A stretch of DNA of 64,000 nucleotides from Haliotis rubra. Its lineage: Eukaryota. Under the pieces are notes generated by a model, which saw nothing but the letters and a program-made list of their open reading frames with translations, did not search any database and was not told the origin of the DNA. The stretch covers positions 186,001 to 250,000 of the forward strand of contig NW_025767293.1 of NCBI RefSeq assembly GCF_003918875.1, written 5' to 3'. Of this stretch, positions 16,301-50,400 are shown piece after piece. Position numbers and translations under genes: made by a program. Position 1 is the stretch's first letter. Each line of letters opens with the position of its first letter.

Positions 16301-19300
16301 CAATCTTAAATGCAAGCGAACAGAAAAATGAACATAATCATGAGATAACGTCCACTGTACAATTTCGAATATAATCATGCTCTCTTTAGACTGACCAATC
16401 TTAGTTTACGTCATTTTTTATCATTTTAATATTTGTATATTTTCCTCGGACAAGTCTGCAAAACATATTCAGAAACACTGAGTACATTGCAGTAAGGAGG
16501 ATGGTAGGGACATGACTGATGTCCCTTAAAACGATGAAATGGCGTTCTAGCTACACTGCTTTTATTGTATGTTTAGAGGGATTGTTAACAAATTTCTATT
16601 TCTTCGTATTGCAGTGTTAAGCTACCTTAACAGCACTATTTAACACATAATTTTCGAGAAAGAAACATTTGAAGTAAATCAAATCAAACTTTGATTTTTT
16701 TTTATTTTATGCTTTGGTCAATCGTACCTATCGTGCACCCATGTCCAGCCCAGCCAGGTGCACAGCTGCAGCGGCCGTCAGCAGCGTCACATTCTCCACC
16801 GTCACATCCGTCTCCACACTCTGTACATGCCTCTCCTTCCGTATAGAACCCAGGTGGACAGGCTGATACACAAAGACTCTGTTGAATTCCATTTTGCAAA
16901 CTTGAAACCGCGGAATTTGAGATGCAATGTCGACTAAAGGATCCATTGAAAGAAATTAACTGGTGGATGATCAAATCAAACTTCCTATGCTGTCTGAGAA
17001 TTATATCATGTTGATTGCCTTCGTCATTCTATAAAACTAGTGAATTGATATTAGATTGTTTGTTTGTCTGTTTAACGCTGCACCCAATATTCCAGCTACT
17101 AGTATATGGCTATCAATAATCGAATCTGGACCAGACAGTCCAAATATTACGACAAGCACGATATTGGAAAGGTTGAAAAGGGAATCCAATTGCTATTATA
17201 CAGCTTATTTAGACAAAGGTGTTACAAAACCGGTGTGTAAAGGATGGAATGCAACGACGAATTGGTAGTAAACGTAGAACTAGTAAACCTTGGTTTGGCG
17301 CTGAATGTGAATTTAAAAAGAAAGTCAGGTGCAGGACTTTGAATAAATCCAAAAAAGATAAGGGACCCGTTTCCCTCCGCGAATACGTGCATGCTAGAAA
17401 TAGTATGATGCTAATTGTCAAGTTAAAAAAGAACAACATCATGAACACAAACTTCGCTTGTTAGAAGAGTCACTTGAAAATCCTGAACGTTTTGTGGAAG
17501 TAATAAAAAAGTTTAAAATCCAACTTTATAGAAAATACTATTCCAAGTCATGAGTGGTACGATCACTTCAAAACTTTATTTAATGTTTCATACCCTGAGA
17601 AAGAATATATTTGTAACATGTTCAGGCCTTCCTCTGATTTTATTATGGACACTGATGTTGAAGATGAAATAACAACTGATATTCTAGATGCACCAATTTC
17701 AGAAGTTGAAATAAGAGGAAGTATTCGACATCTGAAGAATGACAAATCTGCAGGAATAGACAATATTATACCAGAGTTTTTCAAGAACGCGGAAGATGTG
17801 CTTACACCTTACCTACTAGTAATATTTAACATTAAGCTCGAAAATGCAACCTTCCCAGAACCATTGGATGCTGGTATTATCATTCGGTGTAACTACTTAA
17901 ATGATGTGCAACTAAACTATTGCCTTTGTACGTGTTTGAGATTTTTGTCGTGATCGACTGATAAATTACTGTGCATTATAAACACTGAGTGATTCTCTTA
18001 AGGTTAAGCTACAGAATAGCGTTTTGTCATACGATAGATATGACAAAACCATTGTTTCAGTTCATATTCACGTCAGTAAAAATAGCTATAATGAGTGTGA
18101 GAATAGTCTGAAAATTGGCACTGTTATTAATTAAAGCAATTATGGCCACAACGGCATGATACCACCAAGTCGGCGACATATATATTATAAATGGCAACAC
18201 AAAAATACATACATATGTGGTTGCACTACTTATGACTAATAATTCTTTTTGTATTCAAACGTTGAGAATATAAATCATGAATGAAGGGCACATGAATAAA
18301 CTCTATTAGTGAGAAGACATAACTATGCATATGTTTTATGTGTGTGTGTGTGTGTTCGTGTGTGTGTGTGTGTGTGTGTTCGTGTGTTGGGGGAGGGGGG
18401 AGTGTTTAGTTTAAAAAAAAATTATTCACAAAGTGAAAAGGATCGAGGTCAAGTTCTTGCAACTTATAAAACCCCTCTCCAAAGATATTTATAATACCTA
18501 AATATTACATCACAAGCAATTATTAGAAACACAGACAGAGGAAGATTGACAGTTCAGGGTAAGTTATATGATACAAAAGATGTATAGAAAGAAGACTGAA
18601 GTGTGTGTGGGGGTGGGGGTGATAGCCATGGCTTTGTAGTTTATGGCTGATTTAATAGTTTATACATTGGTCCTACCCACAGCTTAAAGATCGTCCTTGA
18701 GTCAGTGAGATGGGACTGTGCTCATAAGAGTTCATTTACCCATTGCCATTTTATCAGAATGTAAACATCTAAAGCGCTATTGAATCTGATTAATATCTAG
18801 AGCATGCTGATGCTGCATCGAATGTATACACACAAAAAACAATCATGTCGAAACAAAGCCACATGGAGTCAGCTCAGTTTCCTTGCTGCCTGGCCGTTAT
18901 GAAAGGTTACCTAGCTGTGTCACCAGCATGTCACACTGTATGACATTCCTTAATGTAATATCGCCATTGAAAAAGGAGTCTTATTGGCTCATTTGTAAGT
19001 GCAAACATTGGATAATGTGAAGGCCTGGGGGAATAAAACTGTTAATTGTCACTGGCATATGTAGTACTGTAAATGTGTCTAGTATTCTGAAACACTTTCG
19101 AAACATATTAAAAGTGAAAATACGGGTTAGAGAGAATCTCCAGCAACCCATACTTGTAGGGATCGGCAGGTCAGGCTCGCTGACTTGGCTGACACATGTC
19201 CTCTTATCCCAATTGCCTATATCGATGGCACTGATATTAAGCACTGGATTGCCTGGTCCAGATTCTATTATTTACAAACCGACATCATACAGCTGGAATA

Positions 19301-20667
19301 TTGCTGAAGGCAGCGTTAAACAACAAACAAACTGATGACGCATATTCGAATATATGTAATATTTGGGCCACAAAATCCACATTAAGTTCATATATGTTAA
19401 GGGGCTTGAGGTTGGAACAAATATTACGGTTATTGTGAGTTATAAACAACATAATTCACCACGAAAGTCAATGTTGCTGAAAGACATTTTGAATCACTTG
19501 GCTGGGAGGGGGTTAAAAGCGGCCGACAATAGAATACTGTAGTCATCACTCTACAGAAGTAGCAAAGGTTTCAACATACTCAGTGTACAGTAGACTCCTA
19601 GCCAGCCAGGCCTACAGGTACATTGTCCGTCTTCGCTGCTGCAGCCACCATCACAGCCCTCACTGCATTGTCCACGGCAGTCAACCCCATAACTCCCAGT
19701 CTCACATTCTTGGAGCAATTAAAGAAACAATAGACAGTTTAATTAAAATATATACTATCACGATGTAAGGGTGTTATACCCTTTTATCAGTTGTTAAATG
19801 TTGCAATTCATTTCTGTTAAATATTCAATATACATGTTGTACACCCTTTTATCAGTTGTTAAATGTTATAATTCATTTCTGTTAAATATTCCATATACAT
19901 GTTGCACACCCCTTTTGTCAGTTGTTAAATATTGCAATTCATTTCTGTTAAATATTCAGTATATGTTGTACACCCCTGTTATCAGTTGTTAAATGTTATA
20001 ATGTCAATTAAGAAACAGTATGTGTCTCCCTGTAAACAGATATAACTGCAGATATGGAGTTAAAGTAATATCAACTCGCTCACTATGAAAATTTGATTAG
20101 ACTCAGGAACTAAAGCTTGTTTTGCTACATGGTGTATTTTTCATATTAGATATACATTTTCTAAAATACTTTACAGTTCCAGTTATACGTGTTCAATGGT
20201 CATAAACCTATGGCTATCAGAATTATCAAAAGCCTGTGGGTGAGTGAGTGAGTTGGGTTTTACGCCGTGTTTTGCAATATTCAAGCAATATCACGGCGGG
20301 GGAAAATAGAAAATGGCTTCACACATTTTATCCATGTAGGGAATCGAAGGCGGGCCTTCGGCCTGACGAGCGAACTCTTTAACAACTAGGCTACCTCATC
20401 CCCCTGTCAAGAGCATTGTAATACTTTCCAGATAAAGGCAGTATATGAGTATATTCCGTTATTATAGCATACGATAGTAACAATTATATTTTTAACTGCA
20501 ACAAAAAAGTACAATCGAAAAAGCATATGAGAAATACAACAGGAGAGATTGAGCATGAGAAATGCTTACACTGAATGATATAGTGGAGGGCAGTGGTGAA
20601 AGTATCACTTACCAGCGCTTGGCTTACACTGAAGCAAGAAAAACCAAAGTACAAAGAAGCAGTGCAT
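7254..20667 (-). CDS. Multi-EGF-repeat type I membrane receptor (MEGF10/Draper/SCARF-like ectodomain), 14 coding exons, about 594 aa
   Basis: Exons 20667-20613, 19708-19580, 16862-16728, 16125-15994, 15386-15252, 14883-14746, 14256-14119, 13145-13014, 12563-12429, 10655-10521, 10153-10016, 9803-9666, 8594-8480, 7383-7254. All junctions are GT-AG and phase compatible; total 1785 nt open to TAA. Confidence 0.88.
7863..8024 (-). mobile_element. SINE family A copy
   Basis: tRNA-like head, TSD ataactttact. Confidence 0.9.
8480..8594 (-). CDS. EGF gene exon 13 (stalk and transmembrane helix)
   Basis: tttttcacag| TELVEHEEQDIASPKLFFWVWIIIIVVLTFGFLACLN(R) |gtgaga; phase 1 to 2. Confidence 0.88.
8937..9185 (+). 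mobile_element. SINE family B, full length
   Basis: Conserved ~250-bp body ending gctggaatattgctgagtgtggtgtcaaactaaac(tcac)n. Confidence 0.9.
9666..9803 (-). CDS. EGF gene exon 12 (EGF-like module 11)
   Basis: CIDGTYGRNCSGLCSRGCTPGSCHHVTGDCNSQCKDGWTGPRCEE; 138 nt, phase 1-1. Confidence 0.92.
10016..10153 (-). CDS. EGF gene exon 11 (EGF-like module 10)
   Basis: CDAGTFGRDCAQKCNPGCKPGTCHHITGDCNYQCKDGWTGRRCEH; 138 nt, phase 1-1. Confidence 0.92.
10521..10655 (-). CDS. EGF gene exon 10 (EGF-like module 9)
   Basis: CNDGTYGHECTQTCTTCLPESCHHVTGDCDNQCQDGWNGQRCKQ; 135 nt, phase 1-1. Confidence 0.92.
10651..11200. repeat. 56-bp minisatellite, about 9 copies, overlapping the exon 10 acceptor
   Basis: Unit tgtgatacaagtgttcactgtaagcagtgcaaggtgcatcagaagccatggcactc. 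Confidence 0.95.
12429..12563 (-). CDS. EGF gene exon 9 (EGF-like module 8)
   Basis: CKDGFYMDGQNCTGCAAGCQGGICNATDGSCTCRVGWTGTNCTS; 135 nt, phase 1-1. Confidence 0.92.
13014..13145 (-). CDS. EGF gene exon 8 (EGF-like module 7)
   Basis: CGDGFYVDGDSCVDCGAGCVRETCNVANGSCSCRDGWTGSNCN; 132 nt, phase 1-1. Confidence 0.92.
13295..13487. mobile_element. Palindromic MITE
   Basis: About 45-bp TIRs ctatggtgtcctataa.tgccatcgcgtggcgcgtaaaaaaaga; apparent 4-bp TSD attc. Confidence 0.85.
13541..13905 (+). mobile_element. Old SINE containing a 5S-rRNA-like segment and an L2-like tail
   Basis: gaagttaagcaacgttgg...cttggatggatgacc resembles the 5S internal control region; central ctctgtccaccaagcagtgaatgggtacc; tail gtgctttataaataaccattattat. 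Confidence 0.6.
14119..14256 (-). CDS. EGF gene exon 7 (EGF-like module 6)
   Basis: CDEGTYGQDCTEKCNRGCKPGTCHHITGNCNNQCKDGWIGQRCEE; 138 nt, phase 1-1. Confidence 0.92.
14355..14722. repeat. (CACT/CACC)-rich tract with a two-copy duplication
   Basis: ctcacaccactgaacaacacca...atgtgactcggact.catgcacc at about 14478 and 14640. Confidence 0.8.
14746..14883 (-). CDS. EGF gene exon 6 (EGF-like module 5)
   Basis: CDEGRYGQDCTGMCSTGCKPGSCHHVTGDCDNQCHDGWTGPTCEH; 138 nt, phase 1-1. Confidence 0.92.
15252..15386 (-). CDS. EGF gene exon 5 (EGF-like module 4)
   Basis: CKDGFYMDGQNCTGCAAGCQGGICNATDGSCACKAGWTGTNCTS; 135 nt, phase 1-1. Confidence 0.92.
15994..16125 (-). CDS. EGF gene exon 4 (EGF-like module 3)
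   Basis: CMDGFYGNDHGCVKCGGGCEGDVCDSGDGNCTCRAGWTGTGCH; 132 nt, phase 1-1. Confidence 0.92.
16728..16862 (-). CDS. EGF gene exon 3 (EGF-like module 2)
   Basis: CPPGFYTEGEACTECGDGCDGGECDAADGRCSCAPGWAGHGCTI; 135 nt, phase 1-1. Confidence 0.92.
   Translation of the reverse strand, partial: PVHLGSIRKERHVQSVETDVTVENVTLLTAAAAVHLAGLDMGAR
17150..17885 (+). mobile_element. Degenerate LINE ORF2 fragment (pre-RT region), intronic and antisense to the gene
   Basis: KPWFGAEC and LDAPISEVEIRGSIRHLKNDKSAGIDNIIPEFFKN...YLLVIFN...FPE motifs, broken by frameshifts. Confidence 0.8.
19115..19331 (+). mobile_element. SINE family B copy (diverged)
   Basis: Aligns to the other B copies. Confidence 0.8.
19580..19708 (-). 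CDS. EGF gene exon 2 (EGF-like module 1)
   Basis: CETGSYGVDCRGQCSEGCDGGCSSEDGQCTCRPGWLGVYCTL; 129 nt, phase 1-1. Confidence 0.9.
19775..20002. repeat. About 65-bp tandem repeat, about 3.5 copies
   Basis: Unit acccttttatcagttgttaaatgttgcaattcatttctgttaaatattc... Confidence 0.9.
20241..20404 (-). mobile_element. SINE family A copy
   Basis: Aligns to the other A copies. Confidence 0.85.
20613..20667 (-). CDS. EGF gene exon 1 (signal peptide)
   Basis: ATG at 20667; MHCFFVLWFFLLQCKPSA then G|gtaagt, phase 1. Confidence 0.82.
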
Positions 20668-28641: not shown

Positions 28642-30646
28642 TTAAATATCATCTTCTGAAGATGCAGGATCTGGTTTCTTTGGCGATGGTTGGCCTGGTA
28701 ACCTCATTGCAAGTTTTTCCTGGAGTTGCTTCGTTACTTGTGAAAACGCCATGAAATTGACTGGAGTAGGACCAGATTTGGGTATTGCTTTGGTTTGTGT
28801 GGTGAGTTTGGAATCTTTTCGTGGTGGTGGAGGTGGTGGACCGCCTTTGCCTGCTGGTTTCAGTGATGAGGAAGTTGGCCGTTGACCAGAATTTTGATAG
28901 TCCCCATCAAAGGTCTGTAGATCGTCACTAGATGTGGAGCCTCGGCAGCTAGATGAGGAGCCTCGGTGGCTAGATGAGGAGCCTCGGCGGCTAGATGAGG
29001 AACCTCGACTATCTGAAAATGTGCTATCTCTGTCACCAAACCTATGATCAGCTAGCTTTGACCTGATAGGCTGTGGTGATATCTCGGGTGGTCCATGGCA
29101 GGCCTGTTTTGGCAGTGGTGGTAGTGGACGTTTCTGTATTGGTATCGTTTCATTTGAAGACATTTCATTTTGACGACCAGAACTGCACAAGGAAGTAAGG
29201 GATGGGTATTCTTTCACATCAGGTGGGTCTGATGGTTTATCCGTTTCTCTTAAGTTTCCAGGACTCTTGGTTAATTTTGGTATTGGAGGGAAAGAAGGCA
29301 GTTTGGGAACTGTTGATACCTCTTCATTTTCAGCACCCTTTTCCTTCATTCCAAGCAGTTTCTCCTTATTTTCATAGGTATCCGACAATCTCGGGATTGG
29401 TGGAAAAGATAAATCATCAACCTTAGGTTCTCTTTGACGTGAACGACGAGCATCCGAGAGGTTCCGCGAAAGATGACTGGTTTTGGCTTTTAGTGGCAGT
29501 CGTGGAAGTGTAGATGGTCCGGATGGTTGCATTTGACCACGAGTATAAGAGAACTGCCTTTTCTGGGACTCCATTTCAATACTTGTCAGTTCATCATATT
29601 CTGAAGACTGTGATGTTGTAGAAGCACGCCCAAAGTGAGCATCATGTGTTTTGGTAGTTTCGTTTGATGCTGGATGTAACTCGAGCAAGTTTCTTGAAAG
29701 AGGCAAGGTTTTCGTTTTAGGCAAGAGTGATACAGTGGATTTTCCTGCTGACCCCGGCAGATCACAGTCATCAAGAGATTCCTTATTATTCTTTGAGGAA
29801 AAATTATCACTGATCATATCAATGATGTTTTGAGACATTTCCTGGATATTTGGCACACCACTTTCCAATATGGGATGGGTAACGTCCTCTTCGGGTATGA
29901 ACATCCCTTCTGTTTCCATGGAAACAACTGAGCCAGCAGATGCGTACACGGACCCAAAGTCCGCATCTGCTGCGGGTGGCATGTCGAGCCAGGATTTTCT
30001 GAAAAGTGTAGACATTGCAGATTGACGTGAATTCGCATCTAATGATTCTCGAAGGATAACATCATCTCCCTCTTCCGGAGTAACTCGTGTGAGGACAATA
30101 TCCATGTTTTCGTCTTCATCAGGTACGAATGTGTCTGTTTTCTTAGTGTTGGAAAGGTACGCCATCTTGCTGGTTTCGAAAGTAGATACTGTGCTGTCTC
30201 CCCTGCTGTCGTCTACATGAACGTAATCATTTGTTAGATTTGAACTGACACTTCCACGTGCCAGGGCTCCTTTGTAGTTAGATTTAAAACGATTATCGCT
30301 TTTACGCCATCCACGACCGAGTTTCTTCAGTAGGATTCCGCTCAATGTTGAACATTTCTTTGGGGGTTGAGGGGGTTGAGGCCTACCAGTTACTGCAAAT
30401 TCTGTTACTGCTTTAATAGATTCTTCAGAAGATGCTGCACCACAAGAATCATTTGACACAGGCCTTTGTGCACCTAAATACTCATACGAATGACCGTCAC
30501 TCTCATTTGATGATGTGTCTGAGTTGCTTTCGCTTCTCTTCTGCTTTCTTAAGGGTACAGCATCACCCTGGTTCTCGTAGATTGCAGCAATGTCCAATAT
30601 GCTGAAGGACAGGTCATTCAGCCTTTGGTCTCGTTTGCAGCGTCTC
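28642..30646 (-). CDS. Adaptor A terminal exon (cytoplasmic tail)
   Basis: 2-kb uninterrupted ORF; acceptor ccttttcaaag; motifs YENQ, YEYL, YVHV, YDEL, YENK, YQNS, RPLPPLP, PPPPPPRK. Confidence 0.92.
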
Positions 30647-33060
30647 CTTTGAAAAGGTTGAAACAAGTCATATCAAGAAAGGTACCAACTATGTAAAATA
30701 GTTTTTTCTTTATACAGGATATACTATAACATACAAATTCAAAACATTTGTACAGATATACCAATAGAAGTATATACACACCGCGGTTCAAAGGCTACAA
30801 GGTGCTTTTAAGCTATGATTTTGAGAGACAGCTGTCTGGACTCGGTGATAAGAGTACTAGTATATGTGTGAGACATTTCACGAATCAAACAACACACTTT
30901 TGTGAAAATCACCACATAAAAGAGAAGCTAATCAATTACTTGTATGTTGTCACAGCGAATGTTCTCAGCAGTTTTCGTCTTGACAGGACGTCCAGTGAAC
31001 AATTTTAAAACAATTATTCAGTATTCTTTGGATCAAATTGTTCCTTTCTTGTGAGAATATATCTACTTCCTGTATAAAATGACAAGCTATTTGTACTTAC
31101 TTGGTAAACAACAGGATAGCCCATACGAGGAGGAGAAGCAGGATATATACGCCTATGAACCCCAGCGATATATATTCTGGAAAAGGAGTAAATAAAAAGG
31201 TACATGTGACATTTTGTAGAAACAACTAGCTACGTTAGAATCGGCCCTAATTTAATCAGATATACCTACTGGTTATACAAGGTTCGGTTGCATTTACATG
31301 ATTCTGAAAAAGGATTGGGTTTCTTTAAAACATATTTCAATCACCAGCTCTACTTTGTTAAAAAAATTCTGAAAAATCGAAATTGTGAAAACATTATTGA
31401 ATTCATTTGATGCTGAGTGCTGACAGGTTATAGGAACATTAAATCAAACAAGGAAGATTGACTGAACATTGTATCCACAACCCATAAAAACTCAAGAGTG
31501 TCATTTGTTATTAAAATATGCAACTGGTTAATAATCACTTTATTTGCATAATGGACGCTTCCACGTTATATACGATGGCGACCCCAAGGTTTCTGTTGAT
31601 AATGTCATGTAACGCGAATTTGTTAATTAACGGTATTTTGGAAAGTTATATTTTCTGTTACGCTTAACGATAATCCTGGAGCATCACACTTAGATACATA
31701 AAAGGAAGGAATATGAAACATTCAGCTCTAGAGTGCAATCACTCTTAGTTATCTAGAACCCGTGAAAGTCCGTGTTAGAATTGCTCTTTAGTAACCCATG
31801 CTTGTCGTAAGAGGCGACTAATAGGATCGGGTGGTCAGGCTCGCTGACTTGGCTGACACACGTCATCGGTTCCCAATTGCGTAGATCGATGCTCATGCTG
31901 TTGATCACTGGATTGTCTGGTCCAGACTCAATTATTTACAGACCTCCGCCATATAGCCGGGATATTGCTGAGTGCGGCGTAAAACTAAACTCACTCACTC
32001 TGACTAAGAGGGAATGTCCCGACTCATGAAACGTTAGATATATTCAAATGTACAACTTCCGGTTGTGGCATTTCGTCAAGGACAGTATTCCAGTTTTATC
32101 AAGGAGTGTCAGCATGATGTGTGAATGATGCATTTCTCTTATTTAACACTTCGGTGAATCCCATAAGTAAGTCATATGATGCTATGACAACATATACGAC
32201 TGAGCGAACTCCCACTCATGTTAAGTATCGTTAACACAAGCTGCAACATGTCATATCGATTGAGTACGGGTACGATACTATGATGCTATACATCGAGTGA
32301 CGACGTCAATGAGGAGACGTGTGTATGGCTGCCCAGGGTGGTCGCACTCACCATTGATGACGTGTCCCCTGTCTCATGTCTTATTATATGACTCTTTATG
32401 CACTTTTTGAATGAAATCTAATTTGTGTAATTTTTAATTTTGACCCCTGGACCCTTTCTAGGTACCGATCCACAAGGCGTATGAAGCGTTACGACCTGTG
32501 GTAATTCTATGGTGTATCATAGACTTCCGAATGTCGTAGCGTTCAGGACCCAGCATTACAAAGAATTTTCAGTCAAATTGTTGGAAAATGATTTCTGTTT
32601 GTAAAATAATTATCATAAATCTCACAAACATCTTTGTTTCTATTTTTTCGGTCAAGTGAGGTCGGTGATAACTTTCTTTTGCCCGGTAGCTTAGTAACTG
32701 TAACTTGAAAACGGTAAAAACACACACTACCAAACCTCTGCAACAATGTAACCTTGTCATCAACAGCTATGACACTCAGAAAATGAATAATTCGACTCGA
32801 ACTTGAGCTATCATTAATATGAATTTACGATTCAAACATATACAGCAAAACGAAATCCCATACATGTTTAGTATCGTAAAACAATTTGCAACATGTCACT
32901 TCACCTATGAGCAAAGTCATATAGATTGCTTTTCCATGATTCATATTTGGGCAACCATCAGCCCAAGTCTAATGCGAGGCATTAAGTTTGTCTAGTATAT
33001 TAAATAAGAACTCTACATACCCGGTCTCATGTCTTTAAAGGACCATCCGTCCCAAGACAT
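28642..33060 (-). CDS. Single-pass membrane protein with a tiny ectodomain and a long Tyr/Pro-motif tail (transmembrane-adaptor-like, adaptor A), 3 coding exons, about 706 aa
   Basis: Exon 33060-33021 MSWDGWSFKDMRP, G|gtatgt, with an in-frame TAG two codons upstream of the ATG. Exon 31176-31101 (E)YISLGFIGVYILLLLLVWAILLFT(K)|gtaagt. Exon 30646-28642 is the 674-aa ORF from RRCKR onward. Phases 1 and 2 are compatible. Confidence 0.85.
31101..31176 (-). CDS. Adaptor A transmembrane exon
   Basis: ccttttccag|...|gtaagt, 76 nt, hydrophobic stretch of about 23 aa. Confidence 0.88.
31431..32000. repeat. About 570-bp direct duplication, copy 2; includes SINE B at 31759-32000
   Basis: Matches 27898-28474; no TSD after this SINE. 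Confidence 0.92.
33021..33060 (-). CDS. Adaptor A first coding exon
   Basis: 40 nt, ATG with an upstream in-frame stop, phase-1 donor gtatgt. Confidence 0.7.
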
Positions 33061-36479: not shown

Positions 36480-36957
36480 TATTACCTTCGTTGCATGTAT
36501 GTGTTAATAACCTTTGCCTAGGCCCCTGTCAACGGATCTTGCAATGGGAAAAGGAGGATGACGTTTTTAGTTGACATTGCTGGTTTTCCCTGGTCCATTT
36601 GCCGCTGTTTCCTTTTGTGTCCGGTTTTATCAAATGCTCGAAACAGGTTAATCTCTTGCTTTGACATTATATGTTATCGCTGTGGAATTGTTTCTTTATT
36701 TTATCTCGTTCTATAACTTCGTGTTCATGTTTGTATGTATCGATAACATTGGTTTTAACGAGACTTACACTACGCGCGACAACTAAGTTCGACAACTGAC
36801 ACATATATTGTTCGAGTAATACCTAGTAGGGCAGAACATAATGTCCTATTCACAAGCATACACATTCAATCACGAGCAAATACGGATGTTAACAGGCGTT
36901 CGCAAGTTGTTTGTTTGTTGTTTGTCGCCAGCAATCGGCAATATTCCAGCTATATGG

Positions 36958-37127
36958 GGGCGGTGGGGTAGCCTAGTGGTTAAAGCGTTGGCTCGTCACG
37001 CCGAGGACCCGGGTTCGAATCCCCACATGGGTACAATGTGTGAAGCCTATTTCTGGTGTCCCCCGCCGTGATATTGCTGGAATATTGCTAAAAGCGGCGT
37101 AAAACCAAACTCAGTCAGTCAGTCAGT
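36958..37127 (+). mobile_element. SINE family A inserted into an antisense SINE B (36906-37200)
   Basis: TSD tccagctatatgg duplicates SINE-B sequence. Confidence 0.92.
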
Positions 37128-37512
37128 CCAGCTATATGGCGGCTGTCTGTACATGATCGAGTCTAGACCAGACAATCCAGTGATCAACAGCATGAGCATC
37201 CTGGTGAGCGTGTCCCATTTCGCCCGTCATGAAGGAACTCAGTACGTACTTGTATGTACCCAGGATGTCACAAGTACTCGTTGTCGGTAAACATGGGCAA
37301 CAATGTGGCGAAAACTGAAACCACAGGCAACGTTTAAATGTTTCCTTCTAAACTTCATCAAATGTGTCGTACTTTCATAGTATGGCATCGAAGATTCCAA
37401 AACAGAGTTGTGTAAATACAAGACTTAATTTCTGTCAGAAGTAAGTACCTTGTCATTTATATTTTGCCATTGAATTTGATTCTGTTACCAGTATGTTTAT
37501 GTAGTATGTTTC

Positions 37513-38762: not shown

Positions 38763-40071
38763 CACCCGTGGTATAAACCTGAATACCGTTCCTTTATTAG
38801 CATTATCATGGGGGTGGGGCCGCGGGGGTAGCCTGGTTGTGAAAGCATTTGCTCTTCACGCCGAAGGCCGGTTTCGATTCCTCAATTGCATACAATGTGT
38901 GAAACTCAAACCACTACAAAGGGCATTTGGCTGCCAAACAGTATGCCGTTTATTAAAACTTTCTCTAAGTTGTCAACGACGTCGCCACTACCACCAAGTA
39001 CAGATAAACCTGAAATAGGTAGGACTGATGCAATGTTAAAGGATAGCGTGTCACATTGATATTTCATGATCATCCTAAAAATCGCTAAAGTTAGGATTAA
39101 GCCGGTGTGCAAATGTAATCGATGATATTTTTCCGGTCACAAATTAATATATACAAATGTAAAAGGAGAGAAGTTCATTTCAAAACAATAATTTCCAAGT
39201 AATATTAGTATTCATATGAATATAAAAGAAAGAATGCTGCAGCGGACCAGAATATATAACTCCTGCCAGGTAAATGCAAATATTAAAACACAACTCCGAG
39301 TAAGAGTACAGTCAGTGCCACGCCCATTTTGAAAGTGCTAGTTTATCTTAAGATGATTCCATGATGTTTCGACAAAAGATAATAAACTCTCTTTTTTGAA
39401 ACTCAATATAATATATTCACATTGACATATTTTTGCTGATTACGGGTAAAGATGTGAAGTCTTACTAACTGCTCAGTATCATTATGTAATATTCTTAATA
39501 TTGGGACGAATCCACACAGCAACAAGGTCCTTTCACTTCTAAGACATCCCCCCAAAATTGTTTATGTACATACGTCCATTTGAATGGACATCCCAGCCCC
39601 ACCCCTCCTCCACTTTTCCCATATAAATCTAATGATCAATGTGACAGGATACATTTACGTATTCTCAGTGAGACGATTCCCTCTATATGAGAATAACGTG
39701 GTATCATGTCATATCCCACGGAGTCACGTACACACGAGTATCCATACACGTATTAACTAAAGAAAACAATGGGGCAAAACTGTTCACATCCGCGTAAAGT
39801 TGAGAAAAGTCGGCCGTGTACGAGAATACAACGGAAACGGAAAAGTGACAGGTGCATCCAAGAAATGTATTTTTAATTTTAGTCTGTCGACAAGTTGGGT
39901 TTCCGATATATTTTTGAAAAAGATATTTTACATAAGTAGCGAACTGTATCCAATTTTGCTATTGTTAAAAACACCTGGCATTGTAACTGTTAGTGCAGTC
40001 AAAATCAGACAGCGATATTATAGGCTGGTTTACATGACAGGACCAGAACCATTAAGTGAAGACTGACATGG

Positions 40072-40073
<2 letters not shown>

Positions 40074-40153
<80 letters not shown>

Positions 40154-40161
40154 GAGAGAGA
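40074..40161. repeat. (GA)n microsatellite
   Basis: Seen directly. Confidence 0.97.
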
Positions 40162-40196
40162 GGTGTTATATTAATTGCTTGTATTTTCATTTCCAG

Positions 40197-40284
40197 TGAA
40201 TAACATCATCATTGCATGGACAATTGCTGGGATTGGAATGGCCCTTGCCTGTTTCTTCCTATTACTATATCTATGCTTGAAATG
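40197..40284 (+). CDS. Adaptor B transmembrane exon
   Basis: 88 nt, phase 1 to 2, hydrophobic helix ending in CLKC. Confidence 0.87.
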
Positions 40285-40449
40285 GTAAGTCTTTCCAAAT
40301 AAATCTTGATTTGTGAAATACGTTTTCCCTATGGCATCAACAGATAATATACGCACACTGGAAATGATACCTTTCACAAAGTCGTAATAACTAAAAACGA
40401 GACAAAAGTGTGACATGGATTCTGTTACGGTTTAAATCAGTGACCAACC

Positions 40450-40480
<31 letters not shown>

Positions 40481-41874
40481 GAATTTGTAACGCGCCAATC
40501 TCACGCCAGCTGGTATGCTCATGGCGCTACAAGTAAAGTTATTTCTTGCTTTTGTTTTAAGTTTTACGTTGTTTGTGATAGTATATGCCGTATGTATTCA
40601 TTTCTTATTCCAGTAAAGACAAGTGTCACGGATGTTCAAGATTTGCATCAGCCTTTCCATCAGATATCGCTACCTTCTACAGGCAAAACTCTTGGGTGGA
40701 CTGTGACCACGAGTACGAGCGTATAAGCTTACAGGACAGGTCCCGGGAGAAAGACACTGTATGCAGCAGTCTACAACCGCATCATGAGGCGCGTCCGGGT
40801 GGGGAGAAAGGAGAAGACTATATAGATCCCCGAGCTTCATCATCAACAGAACATGTCGTAGATGATGTTAGGATATCCAGGTTATCCCATCTTCTGAGAA
40901 CATCGTTCTGGAGTAAAACCAACTCTGAGGAGGTTTTAGAATCTGACCACATACCAACATGTGGAAGCAGCGGGCAAAGGAGAACTCGAAGCTGCCGCAA
41001 GGTGAAGTCAACTGATATTTGTTCGAATACTCTCACTGCGGGGCATTTCATACCAGACTCGGGGGAGATTCGTGCACGGGGACTACCATCCGGAACAGCA
41101 GAAACAATGCCGGATGTCACAGACAGCATGGTTGACATTTTTCAAGAAATCTTCAATCCTTCCAACAACACTCTTAGAAGCCTGCTTCTCAGAACAATTC
41201 ACCCCGCAACTGAAAAAAATAAAAGTCTATCCAAACGTCTCTCTAAGTCTGAGACAGATGTCACCATTGCCAAAACATTCAGATCGTTCGGCAATACAGA
41301 CTACGATCCCTCTACAGACCCACAAATACAAAGTGGCGATGATGACCATTATGTCGCTGTCTCCGATATCAGAGTAACGCCTATACCAAAACGACGAAAA
41401 TCATTGTCCCGGAAGAAACACATCCTTGATGATAAGCAAACGGAAAACGAGTCTGAGCTCAGAAAATTGCCCGGCAGAAGTTTAATTAAATATATTACAA
41501 TCCCCATGTTCGAGGAAAGAAGAGAAGCAAGTATGCCTGTTCCGAGATCCAAACCCATGAGCCCCAGGCAGTGTCAACCAAGCAGCATCTTCAAGACTTC
41601 CTCTGACAAGAAAGGAGGTGGTGAATCTCCCACAAATCGTATGATAGAGGAACACGTACAAGCACCTGCGATGCATCTTGACACCTATGAAAATGAAATC
41701 CTAAGTGGAGTAGGCAGTCAAGAGAATCCGCAAAGCTTTCATGGATCCTTCAGGCGGAGTGTGCAAAAAGCAAGAAATGCTACATGTCTAGACGGACAAG
41801 CAAAAACAGGAAAAGAATATTCGAACGTAAGGATGGTCGTGAAGAATTTGTCATGCTCAATCGAAAACATTTGA
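40197..41874 (+). CDS. Transmembrane-adaptor-like protein (adaptor B), paralog of adaptor A, about 449 aa; 5' exon uncertain
   Basis: Exon 40197-40284 (x)NNIIIAWTIAGIGMALACFFLLLYLCLK(C), acceptor ttttcatttccag, donor gtaagt. Exon 40614-41874, acceptor tttcttattccag, in frame with the 429-aa ORF. Confidence 0.85.
40614..41874 (+). CDS. Adaptor B terminal exon (cytoplasmic tail)
   Basis: 1.26-kb ORF; motifs YERI, YIDP, YVAV, IKYITI, YENE, YSNV. Confidence 0.9.
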
Positions 41875-42343
41875 ATGGATTCAGAATTGTTGAACACTTG
41901 AATTGATGAATAATGATTTTTTATACGAAAAATATTATTAGTTCACATATATATGGTCTCCTTGTTGAGTAGAATATGACCTTCGTGTCCATTGCCAAAC
42001 CTTTTGTAGAACACATGGTGTCATCACGGATGTTTACTGATGCACTCGCATAATATTCACCACGTTAGGCCGTATCAAATCTGTTGGGACAGAAAAGTGA
42101 GACTGGCTATTTCTGGGAGGTATCGTATCTATATCACCCATATGGGAAGGAGGACACAGGGTAGTATTGTAGTCCTTAGGTAGATTACACCTTTCGGAGA
42201 ACGGTGATTGGCTGATTATAGCCAATGAAGTGAAGCCGCATCATAAGCGTAGGGATTTGGGTATTCCTTACATCACAGGTTTCCTCATAGAGAAACTGGT
42301 GTTTTCATTTTAGCGGGTTTTTTTATCGAAGACTGATACGTGT

Positions 42344-45640: not shown

Positions 45641-48600
45641 CAGTAGTAGTAGTTATTTGCTTTATCTAACGTCGCACGCACAACTAAGGTATTTCGGCGA
45701 CGGGGTAGTACACTTATTAAGAAATGAGGGGGAACAAAATATAGAAATTTTGAAAGAGTGGTGTTACTACCCCAAAAAGATTGTATTAGTGTTTGTTGAA
45801 TTTGGTAGAGTGGATAATGTTTTCCTATTCATTGCAAGTTATAATTGAATTTATCTATTATTGTGTTGTTAACTTTATTTGTTAGGTCTGTTTTGGAGTT
45901 AGGTATTTCTATTTTGTTTGGCAGCTTGTTCTGCCATTTCGTTGCCATGGGCTCCGATATGTGACGAGACCCAGATAAAATGTACTTGATTATTTTTATT
46001 TTGGTGGTATAGTATTCTTCTGTATATGTTATTGATTAGATCTAGTCTTTTTGTTGTAGAGTAATTTTTGAGAGCTTGTATGGAGCTTAAGGAATCCGTT
46101 AAAAAATGCAGATGGTAGTGCTTGTTTGTTTGCAAATCCTGAACTATGGCTGCGAGTTCTTCTGTGAAGATACTGGAGTTTGCTGGGAGATTATAGGATT
46201 GTTTCTGGCTTTTTTTGGATTTGTAGATACCAAAACCAGTATTATCATTTTGGTCCTTGGATCCGTCAGTATAGATGTAAAGATTATCTTGTGGATTGTA
46301 ATTTTGTTGTATGAATTCTTGCACTGTGAATTTATTAAGTATATAGTTTTCAGTAAGTTTTGTGTTGGCCAATATTTTTGGCAGTAATGCTGGAGGAAGA
46401 GATTTGTAATATGGGTTTGTATTATATTCTGTTGTATATAAATCAAGTTGTTGTTTCATTTCCTGTATTTTTTGTCCAAAAGGTTTTGGGTATTTGCCTT
46501 TATTGATAATGATTTTATTTTTATTTTTAAGAGATGTATAGTAGTTTTCAGTTTTGTTTGTAATGGGGTTGTTAAGGGATCAGTTACATATTTCATTGTA
46601 CATCTTTCCCATTGGAGAGTGAGGTCTAGTTCCCCGCATTCTACCAATAATGCTTGGAGGGATGTACCTGGGAAGGCCCCAGTTTTACATTTAAGTGCTT
46701 GGAATTGAATGAAACTGAGTTTGTTTATATGTGTTTGTGCCATATCTTGAAATATTTCGCAGCCATAGACTAATTGAGATTTGATGAGTGATTTATATAG
46801 TAATAGTAATGTTTGTTTGTTGCTAACCTATTTACTTTGTGATGAGTATTTAATAATGTTGAGCTCTGACTTGCATTATTCTTGTATGAATTGAATGTGT
46901 TTGTTCCATGTTAAGTGCTGGTCAAGGATTAGACCTAGAAATTTTACTGTATCTGATTGCTGTAACTTTTGTTTGTTAATATAAAGATGTACATTTTGTT
47001 TTCTTCGATGTTGTGCTTTGAATACTACAGTTGTTGTTTTAGTGGTAGAGAGTTGGAACCTTCATTGGTTGGCCCAGTTTTCAATATGGTTAAGTGTAGC
47101 TTGAATTTGTTTTTGTGTATATTTTTTCATTTTTCATTAACCCATATTGCTCCATCGTCGGGAAACTGGGATTTGTTTATGTTTTCACTGAGTTTGTTGA
47201 ATATATCATCAACCATAACATTGAAGAGAGTGGGTGAGATGATACTTCCCTAGAGTGTGCCATTTTCTAGTGTACATTAAACGCCAAAAGAAACGTTACC
47301 CCCCTTCCTGAATGACGTAGCTACCTATCTTCAACTGGTGTTGTGATGCGTGGACGTCCTCTTCTTGGTCTGTCTACGGGGACCCCAGTCTGTCTGAAGC
47401 CCTGACTCAGTTTTATATAACCGTGATACGACCCCGCCTGCGCCATTACAATGGCTCGTTTTCTCTCTTCAGCTGTTAATCGGGGCACAGTTCTCTTACT
47501 TGTGTATAATATCATGCATTCTAGGCTCTCTTTATAACCTATATAATCATTCTACATGTGAAATGGAAGCAAATACTGCTTAAATATTGCTGCGTTTTGG
47601 CGATTGATCATTGCTATGTATTAACAGAAAATGGAAAAATGTTACTTTGCAAGCAAAAAGTTTAACAAAGATAATTGTAGATGTTCCCAAACATTTGTTC
47701 ACAATATGAAAGACACGTTTTACTTGTTTTCACAATTGCAATTCAGCAGAAAATGTTTTAAAAGACTGAAATCATAGGAATGATTATTTTACATTTTACA
47801 CACTCTGCAACAGTTGTTTCTTGTTTAAATACATTGTAGTTGAAAAACGGTGACTTTAAAAGGGTTAATCTTTGTCTCAACGCGGAATTTTATTTAAACC
47901 TTTCTTTTGGACATCTAAATCACTGTTATTAGTTTATTTCGGCATGGACGAAAATAGGACAATTTAACTCTTCTGAAAAAGATGTATTTCACCTAAATAT
48001 GAATGCATTTGAGAAATTTTTTCGTGATTTGCATAAAGCTGTGTTTATAAGCTTTCTTGCAAACTAATACCTTCTTAAATATATTTGATAGTTTTTAAGT
48101 AATTCATAATTGTAGGAGGGTAACGTTTCTTTTGGCATTTTGTGTATAGTTTTGCGTCTATGGAGACTTTAAAGTCTCTGCCTGTTAGAAAGGCTGATAC
48201 ACAATTTAGAAGTGCCCCTTTTAAACCATCTTTTGTACTTTTTGGATGACACCCCCTCTCCGGAGCATATCAAAGGCCTTGGGGAAATCCAAAAAGACTG
48301 CAAATGTGTATTTTTTGTATTTTGTGCAGTTCTGATTTAGTTATGGATTTGTGCTAGATGATCTATGGTGGAGCGATGTTTGAGGAAGCCTGATTGAGTT
48401 ATTGTGTAAGGCGGTTGTTAACCATACCCTCCATGGTTTTGCATATGTTAGATGTAAGAGATATTGGCCGATATGATTCGGCTTTGTTTACGTCTTGGCC
48501 TTGTTTGTGTACGGGTATGATAAGGGAGTGTTTCCAGGCTTTTGGTATTTGACCGTTTATCCAAGCTGTATTATAAAGTTTTAGTAGTTGGTTTATTAAT

Positions 48601-50400
48601 GGTGTAGGGGCGTATTTTAACATGATATAGCTGGCATTATCTTGACCTGGGCCAGTACCTTTTTTTTGGTTGATAACGTTGTAAGGTTCCAATTCAATAA
48701 AAGGTATATTGTAAATTAGATGCGTTTGGGGGTTTTGTAGATTGTAGGCTGCTGCTTTTTGAGATTTGTTTTGAAAATGTTGACAGTCATTTGCAGTTCT
48801 ACTAGTTCTTGTTGTTTGTTTCTATTGTTGTTTATAACTGGAATGTATTGTTTTCTATTTTTATCCCTCATTGAGTTTATTTTTTTCCAGACTTTTCTGG
48901 AATTTGTTTTGAAGCTTAGGTTGCTGCAGAAATTGTGCCAGTCCTGGTCTCTGGCCTTTTGTATTATTTGTTTTACATTTTGTCTAGCTGCCTGTGCCAG
49001 AGGAATTTTATTTTTATCTTTGCGTGCTTGTGGGAGATCTAAGTGCCACATCCGTAATGAATTCAACCAAAGTATTGAAATTGGGTTGGTTGTAAGAGCT
49101 GTGACCTGTTGTTTGGTACAGGTCATTGGACTGATTGATTTGGTGTATTTTGAGTAGTTTAGTCGTCTTGCAGCATTCGATTTGTTTGTGCTTTTCACTT
49201 TCTTTTGTGGGTTTATTTTGTTTTTCTTTGTAAGTGCTCAAAGCTGATGTTTGAAATGTTACTGGTTGAGGTTTTCCTTTATTTTGTGATTTCTCATGCT
49301 GTACCAGAGGTTTTTTCAAACTCAGAGAGAAGTGTTTGATGTTTTGTTTATCCCTGGAATCATTTATAGAAAGATCCATTTTGAGTAGTACCTTGTTACT
49401 GTTTGGAGTTGAGGTGTTTGGTTTTTCCCGATTTAGATCAATAGACTGATTGTATCTATCTTGTGTGTGGGTTTTATGATAGTTGTTGTTTGCCTGTTTA
49501 GTGTATTTGGTTTTCTTGGTTACATGTCTGTTGAGTTCAGCTGTGAGCTGTTGTTTATATCGACACTTATGGGAAAGTGAGCTATGGCCTGATATCCGGC
49601 AATGGATGCAGGAAAGACAAGCTTTACGTTTATCGAATGTATGGTTATTTCTGCTGCATTTAGTGCAATGTTGGTTTTCTGTACAATCTTTTTGAATATG
49701 GTCATATTGGAGACACTTTGTACATTGTGTATTTTTTTAAGGTGAGGTTCTACCTTGCGATCAATGATGCTAGCAATGGTATATTTGTTGTCAGGCTAGT
49801 GCCTTGGAAGGCAAGAACTACATAGTTGGTTGGTTTTTCTTTTGACATGATTCTGTTGGCAGAAAGAGTTTAGGTTTGTGTTCTGTTGTTGTTGGCTGTT
49901 TGGACGAGAGAATCTAGTTGTTGTTGTGTTATTGTTGGGTCTAGTTGTATAACCCCTTTTATTTGTTGACTCAAGTGAGGTGTTACATTTTTATCTGGAA
50001 TGTTTCTGATTTTGTTTATTGCTTTGTAGTTTGGTGCAAAAGCTTTTTGTGTGAACTCGATGAGATATCCATGACCACAGTTTTAAGTTTAGCAGGTGGT
50101 ACTCAATTCTGGCTAAGAGCCACACCCAAATTGGTCTACTATTAAGGTTTGAGATAGGCTTATATCCTTCAGTGTACTCGTAATGAGTACTTGTGTGTGG
50201 CTTACTGGTTTGTTGGGGTTTAGAATGTCCTTAGTGATATTGACAGAACTGTCAGATGATACTGATGTATCTGTAAGGGTATGATTATTGATTTTGTTTT
50301 CTTTTGTTGCTTGGTCTTGTTACTTGGGTGAAGTGAAACTCCTGTTGAGGTTCTGGTTTAGTTTTAACATTACTGAAGTCCAGAAGTCTTGATCTTGGTC
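45641..50400 (-). mobile_element. Decayed I/Nimb-clade LINE (ORF1 zinc knuckles, RT, RNase H)
   Basis: ORF1 CTKCLQYDHIQKDC plus two further Cys/His knuckles near 49550-49730. RT motifs YRPISLTSNICKTME, AVFLDFPKAFD, GSIISPTLFNVMVDD, FPDD, KFLG. RNase H motifs IYTDGSK, TDSLS, WVSSHIGAHGNEMAEQAAK. Many stops. 5' boundary approximate. Confidence 0.9.
47275..48144 (-). mobile_element. Non-autonomous Tc1-like element nested in the LINE RT
   Basis: TIRs ...gccaaaagaaacgttaccc, TA TSD; HTH remnant PRLTAEERKRAI...DRPRRGRPRITT. Confidence 0.92.

What the first reader, a model, noticed from the sequence alone, without database searches (positions are those of the whole stretch)
40197..41874. Adaptor B: CxxC directly after the TM helix, plus mixed activating and inhibitory Tyr motifs
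Seen: ...FFLLLYL-CLKC-KDKCHGC spans the splice junction; the tail has YERI, YIDP (YxxP), YVAV, IKYITI (ITIM-like), YENE and a near-terminal YSNV. Established: a juxtamembrane CxxC is the palmitoylation/raft signal of LAT, NTAL, PAG1 and LIME. Inference: B is raft-targeted while A has a single Cys there, so the paralogs may be functionally paired.
Basis: partly seen in the sequence, partly recalled or inferred. Interest (0 to 1): 0.72.

Follow-up and report, generated by a model that had tools for sequence, protein, structure and literature searches.

The report
Abalone membrane-anchored adaptor-like orphan protein

Summary
The window is Haliotis rubra. Region 40197-41874 holds the last two exons of RefSeq gene LOC124255100 ("uncharacterized protein"). 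An 88-nt TM exon (40197-40284) joins at 40284/40614 to a 419-codon tail exon and reads LCLKC|KDKCHGC. The junction is used in the Gnomon models of three species, and its splice sites and frame are kept in five Haliotis genomes. No RNA evidence could be obtained.

The protein is leaderless with a 3-17 aa outside stub, net +3 charge after the helix, and a tail AlphaFold2 leaves unstructured. dN/dS is about 0.4. No relative outside Haliotis turned up among 1.84 billion proteins, and no Pfam family matches.

- **Cysteines:** only two juxtamembrane Cys (C-x4-C) are invariant. Each species keeps at least three Cys and one CxxC, but a different one.
- **Tyrosines:** only three are invariant (FYRQN, DHEYERI, EDYIxP). 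The ITIM-like IKYITI is rubra-only, YENE and YSNV are in rubra and asinina only, and YVAV is F in asinina.
- **A versus B:** A/B paralogy is suggestive, not demonstrable. A's single Cys is also invariant, so a raft/non-raft contrast does not follow.

Best reading: an S-acylated, phospho-regulated scaffold that works like a LAT/PAG/LIME adaptor but is not a family member.

The parts
37300..37440 (+). 3' part of the 5' (mostly untranslated) exon of gene B. Its last base A (37440) supplies the A of a split start codon A|TG. Transcription start unknown.
   Evidence: Donor ...CAGAA|GTAAGTAC is conserved in rubra, asinina, rufescens and cracherodii. In rufescens the RefSeq CDS begins at this last A.
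38943..39010 (+). Relic or alternative mini-exon. It is homologous to the exon that encodes MSPLPTSTVKPET in North-Pacific species. In rubra the AG acceptor is lost, but the donor ATAG|GTAGG is kept.
   Evidence: tblastn hit SPLPPSTDKPE. Alignment shows the conserved donor, the lost acceptor in rubra and a 17-nt deletion in asinina.
40197..40284 (+). TM exon (88 nt, phase 1 in, phase 2 out). It encodes (M)NN-IIIAWTIAGIGMALACFFLLLYLCL-K plus the first two bases of the junction Cys.
   Evidence: AlphaFold2 helix at residues 2-36 is the only confident part.
40285..40613 (+). Intron (GT..AG) containing an (AAT)n microsatellite.
   Evidence: Genomic contigs of other individuals cover it.
40274..40284 (+). 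First half of the juxtamembrane Cys cluster. It holds Cys TGC 40274-40276 (rubra/asinina only) and the first two bases of the invariant junction Cys.
40614..40635 (+). Second half of the Cys cluster: last base of the junction Cys, then KDK, Cys (40624-40626, invariant), H, G, Cys (40633-40635, Trp in asinina).
40614..41874 (+). Tail exon: 419 codons of predicted disordered cytoplasmic tail plus stop TGA 41872-41874.
   Evidence: ORF. (pLDDT below 50 for residues 31-449). (dN/dS 0.39-0.45, ORF intact in 5 species).
40678..40680 (+). Invariant Tyr 1 (DIAxFYRQN).
   Evidence: Aligns to invariant DIAAIYENQ of gene A.
40714..40716 (+). Invariant Tyr 2 (CDHEY[E/D]RI). It resembles the Src-family SH2 motif pYEEI and is also a YxxPhi sorting-type motif.
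   Evidence: Aligns to invariant HSYE of gene A. The YEEI/V motif of PAG is described in PMC3492796.
40819..40821 (+). Invariant Tyr 3 ([E/K]DYI[D/N/H]P).
   Evidence: Aligns to invariant NDYV of gene A.
41350..41352 (+). Tyr of DDDHYVAV, Phe in H. asinina.
41485..41502 (+). IKYITI, which fits the ITIM consensus in H. rubra only (FRYNTI in asinina, Cys in the other three species).
41686..41688 (+). Tyr of TYENE, present in rubra and asinina, Leu in North-Pacific species.
41818..41820 (+). Tyr of EYSNV, present in rubra and asinina, His in North-Pacific species.
28642..33060 (-). Neighbour gene A (LOC124255109), head-to-head with B. Exon 1 is 33060-33021, the TM exon 31176-31101 (76 nt, same phases 1/2), and the tail exon 30646-28642. 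It has a single invariant juxtamembrane Cys (KRRC).
   Evidence: Head-to-head synteny is kept in rufescens, cracherodii and asinina.

Best explanation
Region 40197-41874 is the coding body of a genuine, fast-evolving gene known only from Haliotis (H. rubra LOC124255100).

**Shown**
- It encodes a leaderless type III single-pass membrane protein.
- The start codon is created by splicing (A|TG).
- Only 3-17 residues lie outside the cell, followed by a 25-residue helix and then a basic, Cys-rich juxtamembrane segment.
- That segment has an invariant C-x4-C plus one or two further Cys that change position between species.
- The cytoplasmic tail is about 415-430 residues and intrinsically disordered, with short conserved islands.

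**Inferred**
- The juxtamembrane cysteines are probably S-acylated by DHHC enzymes (about 65%). This would hold the start of the tail on the inner leaflet and bias the protein towards ordered membrane domains. The species-to-species shift in Cys position fits this better than a fixed metal site.
- The conserved islands would act as docking and phosphorylation sites.
- These islands include three invariant Tyr, two of them in acidic contexts (DHEYERI, EDYIxP; FYRQN is not).
- They also include several invariant basophilic Ser sites (RISRLS, KRLSKS, RRKSLS, RRSV) and short helix-prone blocks (SMVDIFQEIF, LRSLLL).
- Together this would make the protein a membrane-anchored scaffold that works like the vertebrate LAT/PAG/LIME/SCIMP adaptors.
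- pTyr/SH2 docking specifically is about 35-40% likely.
- It is not a homologue of any of those families.
For: **Gene reality**
- RefSeq models exist in three species, plus an unannotated intact ortholog in H. asinina and one more Haliotis genomic contig.
- The ORF is intact in five species, with dN/dS 0.39-0.45 at dS 0.26-0.65.
- Splice sites are conserved.

**Topology**
- There is no signal peptide.
- Net charge is 0/-1 before the helix and +3 in the 15 residues after it.

**Cys cluster**
- 3-4 Cys lie within about 12 residues, P about 1e-3.
- Two are invariant and the others turn over, but each species keeps at least 3.
- CxxC, CxC or single juxtamembrane Cys are acylated in LAT, NTAL, LIME, PAG, SCIMP and FcgRII (PMC7655920, PMC2194115, PMC3492796).

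**Disorder**
- AlphaFold2 mean pLDDT is 32, and only the TM helix is confident.

**Conserved Tyr**
- Three Tyr are invariant, two of them in acidic contexts.
- All three align to invariant Tyr of neighbour A.

**Architecture class**
- Language-model neighbours of both A and B are LIME1, PAG, SCIMP, poxvirus A36R and HCMV UL135. All scores are 0.90 or below, so these are leads only.
- The rubra protein passes the operational screen used to discover LIME (PMC2194115).

**Background**
- ITIM/SH2 signalling is reported in an oyster, by that paper's abstract (PMC11841013, seen only in the listing; not read).
Against: - There is no RNA, protein, acylation or phosphorylation evidence. RNA-labelled runs of the species hold almost none of its words.
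- Tyr residues are not preferentially conserved (3/8 invariant against 50% overall). Most of the SH2-type motifs are lineage-specific.
- Motif enrichment disappears in three of five species.
- The authors of the TRAP screen say most proteins that pass it are false positives (PMC2194115).
- There is no homology to any TRAP family.
- Seven of ten tail Cys are invariant, which is unexplained by an adaptor model.
- Language-model hits at these scores are reached by shuffled proteins a third of the time.
Confidence: 0.45

Rival explanations
1. It is a membrane-anchored disordered protein whose function does not run through phosphotyrosine. It would be a Ser/Thr-phospho-regulated scaffold or trafficking/regulatory subunit. 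YERI would act as a YxxPhi AP-2 sorting signal, and the short amphipathic helices would bind a partner or the membrane. The Cys cluster may still be acylated.
For: - Invariant basophilic Ser motifs (RISRLS, SCRxV, KRLSKSE, RRKSLS, RRSVQK) and helix-prone blocks are the best-conserved parts of the tail.
- Tyr is conserved below the tail average.
- Language-model neighbours also include non-adaptor stub-TM-tail proteins such as TMIE, FAM163, opalin and C1orf185.
Against: - All three invariant Tyr, two of them in acidic contexts, are matched by invariant Tyr in neighbour A.
- DHEYERI resembles the Src-SH2 motif YEEI (PMC3492796).
Confidence: 0.35
2. The juxtamembrane Cys/His cluster is a metal-binding (zinc-clasp-like) or redox site that tethers a cytosolic partner, rather than an acylation site.
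For: - Rubra has C-x2-C-x4-C-H-x-C, and 7 of 10 further tail Cys are invariant.
- There is a weak, sub-threshold Pfam match of residues 7-38 to the LITAF-like zinc ribbon (E=0.28).
Against: - The His is not conserved (R or L elsewhere).
- The Cys positions shift between species, with only two invariant. That is atypical for a tetrahedral metal site and typical for acylation.
- The Pfam hit is far below the cut-off (11.8 against 23.8 bits).
Confidence: 0.1
3. The topology is reversed, or the gene is spurious. Either the 419-residue part is extracellular or luminal, or the ORF is not a functional gene.
For: - The tail has ten Cys and five N-x-S/T sequons in rubra (read directly from the translation).
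- No transcript evidence was obtained.
Against: - Positive-inside rule: +3 after the helix, 0/-1 before it.
- Polybasic runs and a disordered composition.
- The sequons are mostly not conserved.
- dN/dS is about 0.4 and the ORF is intact in five species.
- RefSeq predicts two isoforms. Gnomon adds extra isoforms only with transcript support (my own knowledge, not checked here).
Confidence: 0.05

Closest known systems
Raft-associated transmembrane adaptor proteins (TRAPs): LAT, NTAL/LAB (LAT2), PAG1/Cbp, LIME1
   Same: - Leaderless type III topology with a very short outside stub (LIME 4 aa, B 3-17 aa) and a single TM helix.
- Cys motif with basic residues immediately after the helix.
- Long unstructured tail without domains, carrying Yxx[ILV]-type motifs.
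- H. rubra B passes the three-part sequence screen that discovered LIME (PMC2194115).
   Different: - No detectable sequence homology.
- The CxxC is not positionally conserved. The invariant pattern is C-x4-C, and in three species the first CxxC starts 6 residues after the helix, outside the 0-4 range of the screen.
- The tail is longer (about 420 aa), and only three Tyr are conserved.
- The taxon is a gastropod, with no immunoreceptor context known.
- Nothing has been tested experimentally.
SCIMP and LST1/A (small palmitoylated adaptors with CxC or Cys motifs)
   Same: Stub-TM-Cys-tail architecture. SCIMP clusters are among the language-model neighbours.
   Different: SCIMP is about 145 aa with a proline-rich Lyn-SH3 site. 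B has no obvious SH3 ligand (A does: RPLPPLP). There is no homology.
Viral membrane adaptors: vaccinia A36R (OPG164) and HCMV UL135
   Same: These are the top language-model neighbours of B (0.89) and A (0.90). They have an N-terminal membrane anchor and a disordered tail that recruits host adaptors through phospho-Tyr (A36R) or SH3 ligands (UL135). The functions are from my own knowledge.
   Different: Scores are at or below the level that shuffled sequences often reach. There is no alignment-based similarity. They are viral proteins and unrelated in origin.
Neighbour gene A (LOC124255109) in the same window
   Same: - Head-to-head neighbour in four species.
- Same three-part gene structure and intron phases (1 then 2), with TM exons of 76 and 88 nt.
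- Same topology.
- Collinear short blocks: DIAxxY, DHxYE, DYVxVDD/DYIxP, LLRTSxW, FIPD/E, IIDMISxNFSSKNN against MVDIFQEIFNPSNN, and PIPK.
   Different: - A is 690-706 aa and proline-rich, with SH3-ligand-like motifs and a single juxtamembrane Cys.
- BLASTP E=0.03, hhalign probability 0.4-4%, and hmmsearch scores are no better than shuffles.

Membership tests
Raft-associated TRAP class (operational definition of Brdickova et al. 2003, PMC2194115) | N-terminal peptide of 5-50 aa followed by a TM helix, with no signal peptide | tested here: met
   Rubra X1 reads MNN plus a 25-aa helix (3 aa, borderline; LIME itself has 4). Rufescens has a 16-aa stub plus helix. The only confident AlphaFold2 element is the helix at residues 2-36.
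Raft-associated TRAP class (PMC2194115) | CxxC palmitoylation motif starting 0-4 aa downstream of the TM helix | tested here: inconclusive
   Rubra and asinina have CLKC straddling the helix end, which meets the feature. Rufescens, cracherodii and DRR299178 read YMKCKDSCRGC, where the first Cys is at +2 but the CxxC starts at +6, which does not meet it strictly. Asinina lacks the second CxxC (CLGW).
Raft-associated TRAP class (PMC2194115) | At least one Yxx[I/L/V] motif in the cytoplasmic tail | tested here: met
   Y[E/D]RI is invariant in five species. YVAV is present in four.
Raft-associated TRAP class | Experimental S-palmitoylation, detergent-resistant-membrane flotation, inducible Tyr phosphorylation, and SH2 partner binding | not testable with these tools
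   No biochemical data are available. No RNA evidence was obtained either.
LAT / LAT2 / PAG / LIME1 / SCIMP sequence families (Pfam) | Significant match to the family profile | tested here: not met
   No TRAP family appears even at E up to 10 for full-length B and A of two species or for the tails. An HMMER profile of B against 1.84 billion representatives finds only Haliotis.
ITIM-bearing inhibitory proteins | [I/V/L/S]xYxx[I/V/L], conserved among orthologs | tested here: not met
   The consensus is matched only by IKYITI in H. rubra. Asinina has FRYNTI, and the three other species have Cys in place of Tyr.
ITAM-bearing activating adaptors (DAP12/FcRgamma type) | Two Yxx[L/I] motifs spaced 6-12 residues apart | tested here: not met
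   The only Yxx[L/I] motifs in rubra are Y34 (YERI) and Y293 (YITI), which are 259 residues apart (positions).
Paralog of neighbour gene A | Statistically significant sequence similarity | tested here: inconclusive
   - BLASTP E=0.03.
- hhalign probability 4% and 0.4%.
- hmmsearch no better than 900 shuffles.
- Loose-gap collinear chain z=1.3-4.0.
- The 3 invariant B Tyr align to Tyr of A: 3 of 3 in five of six species pairs, 2 of 3 in one. In one of the 3/3 pairs the third lands on a different A Tyr. The 3/3 outcome is reached in 1-5% of window shuffles.
- Identical intron phases and adjacency in 4 species.

The most novel reading that the evidence does not exclude
A and B are an anciently duplicated, head-to-head pair of S-acylated transmembrane adaptors. 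They would have arisen independently of the vertebrate TRAPs in the abalone lineage and sit next to a receptor-type tyrosine phosphatase gene. Their three shared invariant tyrosines would be Src-family kinase targets that dock SH2 proteins (Src/Csk/Shp2/Grb2 orthologs). That would make them the first LAT/PAG-like membrane scaffolds described in a lophotrochozoan and an example of convergent invention of this signalling device.
Probability: 0.25. Interest if true: 0.6.

Novelty: new member of a known kind. Interest (0 to 1): 0.38.

Why it matters
Transmembrane adaptors of the LAT/PAG/LIME type are described for vertebrate leukocytes. My literature searches found no invertebrate counterpart, although that is limited evidence.

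If this abalone pair really is acylated and tyrosine-phosphorylated, it would show that the device (stub, helix, acyl-Cys, disordered pTyr tail) can be invented repeatedly. It would also give mollusc immunology and cell signalling a handle on how Src-family and Csk activity is organised at the membrane.

The comparison among five Haliotis species gives a concrete lesson for motif-based annotation. Most 'textbook' SH2/ITIM motifs in a disordered tail turn over within a genus, while Cys number near the membrane is kept and Cys position is not.

As it stands the finding is a sound annotation of an orphan gene with a plausible but untested mechanism.

Tried and rejected
- **RNA evidence.** The look-up of sequencing runs (kind rna) listed no RNA holder. 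The four best holders, once laid, were genomic contigs covering the intron and intergenic DNA, so they say nothing on splicing.
- **Distant homologs.** The word search and the full HMMER profile search found nothing outside Haliotis.
- **Pfam.** Scans at E up to 10 gave only sub-threshold noise such as CytochromB561_N, zf-LITAF-like and Vpu.
- **Structure.** AlphaFold2 gives no fold to search, so no fold search was run.
- **A/B paralogy by standard tools.** BLASTP, hhalign (twice) and hmmsearch against shuffles were all negative.
- **N-terminus.** I first considered that rubra's N-terminus is encoded by the SPLPPSTDKPE mini-exon from an in-frame ATG at 38943. I rejected this as the main form because rubra has lost that exon's AG acceptor and asinina carries a 17-nt deletion there. 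The conserved 5' exon ending in A plus the TM exon starting with TG explains RefSeq X1.
- **Other readings.** Reverse topology, a Zn site and a spurious ORF were considered and ranked low (see rivals).
- **Unused search.** The third homologous-protein search was not spent. A profile of near-identical orthologs would add little.
Full report
**What is there.** The window is Haliotis rubra. The 419-codon ORF at 40615-41871 is 100% identical to RefSeq XP_046544898 and XP_046544897, 'uncharacterized protein LOC124255100' isoforms X2 and X1.
- An acceptor tttccag| precedes 40197.
- The 88-nt exon encodes NNIIIAWTIAGIGMALACFFLLLYLCLK and ends AAATG|gtaagt at 40284.
- The next exon begins at 40614 after ttattccag|.
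- The split codon TG|T gives Cys, followed by KDKCHGCSR and a tail ending at TGA 41872-41874.
- Without splicing the frame stops at once (LCLKW*).

**Is the junction used?** I could not get RNA evidence. No RNA run holds the stretch. The four best holders proved to be genomic contigs that run through the intron. The comparative evidence is strong instead:
- Gnomon models of H. rubra, H. rufescens and H. cracherodii all use the junction.
- I found an unannotated intact ortholog in H. asinina and another on a Haliotis genomic contig from run DRR299178.
- Donor, acceptor and frame are conserved in all five. Asinina has a GC-AG intron, which may be why it is unannotated.
- The tail ORF is intact in all five (415-431 codons), with dN/dS 0.39-0.45 at dS 0.26-0.65.

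This is a real protein-coding gene under moderate purifying selection.

**N-terminus.** A 5' exon ending ...CAGAA|GTAAGT at 37440 is conserved in four species. The start codon differs by lineage:
- In rufescens the CDS starts with that last A, spliced to a mini-exon beginning TG TCG CCC. The start codon A|TG is made by splicing, giving MSPLPTSTVKPETD.
- In rubra the mini-exon's AG acceptor is lost, and in asinina it carries a 17-nt deletion.
- In both of those species the TM exon itself begins with TG, so direct splicing again makes A|TG (MNNIII..., MEDIII...).

The outside stub is therefore only 3-17 residues in every species. Net charge is 0/-1 before the helix and +3 in the 15 residues after it. 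The long part is cytoplasmic by the positive-inside rule (inference).

**The cysteines.** The juxtamembrane segment differs by species:

| Species | Juxtamembrane sequence |
|---|---|
| H. rubra | LCLKCKDKCHGC |
| H. asinina | LCLKCKDKCLGW |
| H. rufescens, H. cracherodii, DRR299178 | LYMKCKDSCRGC |

- Only the junction Cys and the Cys five residues later are invariant (C-x4-C).
- Every species keeps at least three Cys and one CxxC, but not the same one.
- Three or more Cys in ten residues has P of about 1.4e-3 at the tail's own Cys frequency.
- Conservation of number and proximity, but not of exact position, is what one expects of S-acylation sites rather than of a metal site (inference).
- The premise that juxtamembrane CxxC is the palmitoylation and raft signal of LAT, NTAL, PAG and LIME is correct (PMC2194115, PMC7655920, PMC3492796).
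- Those same sources show CxC (SCIMP) and single Cys (FcgRII Cys208) being acylated too.
- Gene A's single Cys is invariant in a KRRC context.

**The tail.** AlphaFold2 with the ortholog alignment gives mean pLDDT 32. Only the TM helix is confident, and residues 31-449 are all below 50, with a few low-confidence short helices. No Pfam family matches. A profile of four orthologs against 1.84 billion representative proteins finds only Haliotis.

Of 419 tail positions, 50% are invariant in five species. By residue type this is Cys 7/10 and Tyr only 3/8.
- **Invariant Tyr:** DIAxFYRQN, CDHEY[E/D]RI and [E/K]DYI[D/N/H]P.
- **YVAV:** FVAI in asinina.
- **IKYITI:** fits the ITIM consensus in rubra only (FRYNTI in asinina, Cys elsewhere).
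- **YENE and YSNV:** present only in rubra and asinina (Leu and His elsewhere).
- **Enrichment:** Tyr in YxN/Yxx[ILVM]/YxxP contexts is enriched in rubra and asinina (6/8, P about 0.005, motif classes chosen after the fact). It is not enriched in the other three species (P 0.11-0.23).

'Mixed activating and inhibitory motifs' is therefore not a conserved property of this protein. The best-conserved islands also include basophilic Ser motifs (RISRLS, KRLSKSETD, RRKSLS, RRSVQK) and helix-prone blocks (SMVDIFQEIFNPSN, LRSLLL).

**Relation to gene A.** A (LOC124255109, minus strand, exons 33060-33021, 31176-31101 and 30646-28642) lies head-to-head with B. The arrangement is kept in rufescens, cracherodii and asinina. 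Both genes have a small TM exon entered in phase 1 and left in phase 2 (76 and 88 nt), followed by one large tail exon.

Standard tests do not show homology:
- BLASTP E=0.03.
- hhalign probability 4% and 0.4%.
- A B-profile hmmsearch scores the real A proteins no better than 900 shuffles.

Weaker evidence points towards paralogy:
- A loose-gap collinear alignment gives z=1.3-4.0.
- It lines up DIAxxY, DHxYE, DY, LLRTSxW, FIPD/E, the IIDMISxNFSSKNN / MVDIFQEIFNPSNN block, and PIPK.
- All three invariant B tyrosines fall on A tyrosines in five of six species pairs, and two of three in the sixth. In one of the five the third falls on a different A Tyr than the invariant NDYV.
- That 3/3 outcome is reached in 1-5% of window-preserving shuffles.

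I rate ancient paralogy likely (about 70%) but unproven.

**What it works like.** The ESM-Atlas feature search puts both A and B nearest to poxvirus A36R, HCMV UL135, LIME1, PAG and SCIMP. It also puts them near TMIE, FAM163, opalin and C1orf185. All of these are stub-TM-disordered-tail proteins. Scores are 0.90 or below, which the tool says shuffled proteins often reach, so this only confirms the architecture class.

H. rubra B passes the three-part sequence screen that discovered LIME (PMC2194115), but those authors warn that most proteins passing it were false positives. My best explanation is an S-acylated, phospho-regulated membrane scaffold that works like a TRAP without being a family member. 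I put acylation at about 65% and pTyr/SH2 docking at about 35-40%. The main rival is a scaffold or trafficking protein driven by Ser phosphorylation and YxxPhi sorting.

**Context noticed.** About 8 kb downstream of A, on the minus strand at 9616-19718, lie about a dozen MEGF/laminin-type EGF exons. They are collinear with the 5' part of an H. asinina gene that carries EGF repeats and two tyrosine-phosphatase domains. A receptor tyrosine phosphatase next to two Tyr-motif membrane proteins is suggestive but may be coincidence.

**Verdict.** The gene is already modelled in RefSeq but uncharacterised. If the mechanism holds, it would be a non-homologous new member of the transmembrane-adaptor kind. 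Interest is moderate-low until acylation or phosphorylation is shown.

Noticed in passing
window 37440 | 40197 (and L002 10001 | about 12026): The start codon of gene B is assembled by splicing (A|TG). The 5' exon ends in A in four species. The downstream partner that supplies TG is the mini-exon in the North-Pacific species but the TM exon itself in rubra and asinina. The N-terminal stub was thus swapped while the split ATG was kept.
   Followed up: partly
window 38943-39010: This is a relic mini-exon (SPLPPSTDKPE) homologous to the rufescens coding exon. The acceptor AG is lost in rubra and asinina has a 17-nt deletion, yet the donor site is still conserved in all four species. It may still be used in some transcripts.
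   Followed up: partly
L004 684-2249 (minus strand), H. asinina: An intact ortholog of gene B is present but not annotated in H. asinina. Its TM-exon donor is GC (ATG|GCAAGT) instead of GT.
   Followed up: yes
window 41872-41901: The rubra and asinina stop TGA aligns to a Gly codon (GGA) in the three North-Pacific species, which read 9 codons further (GLDSEFW[S/N]S) to a TGA that is still present in rubra. The C-terminus therefore differs between lineages.
   Followed up: yes
window 9616-19718, minus strand: About a dozen exons encode MEGF/laminin-type EGF repeats (C..DG.YG..C...C..GC..G.C....G.C...C..GW.G..C). They are collinear with an H. asinina gene that has EGF repeats plus two Y_phosphatase domains, a receptor-type tyrosine phosphatase immediately downstream of gene A.
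   Followed up: partly
P0004 residues 1-80 (H. cracherodii model; L003 10001 onwards): The 80-residue N-terminal extension of the cracherodii model (…VTDRPGSGRSPVITP…) looks like a Tc1/mariner-type transposase fragment. It is probably a gene-model artefact.
   Followed up: no
window 36896-37293; 40064-40163; 40441-40483: There is an extremely high-copy repeat just upstream of B's 5' exon, with summed contig depth in the millions. A (GA)n tract lies just before the TM exon and an (AAT)n tract lies in the intron.
   Followed up: no
window 45899-46459 (minus strand), 48716-49379 (minus strand), 17618-17953 (plus strand): These ORFs look like retroelement pieces: an RNase H-like motif (DGSK…GFGIY) and reverse-transcriptase-like fragments.
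   Followed up: no
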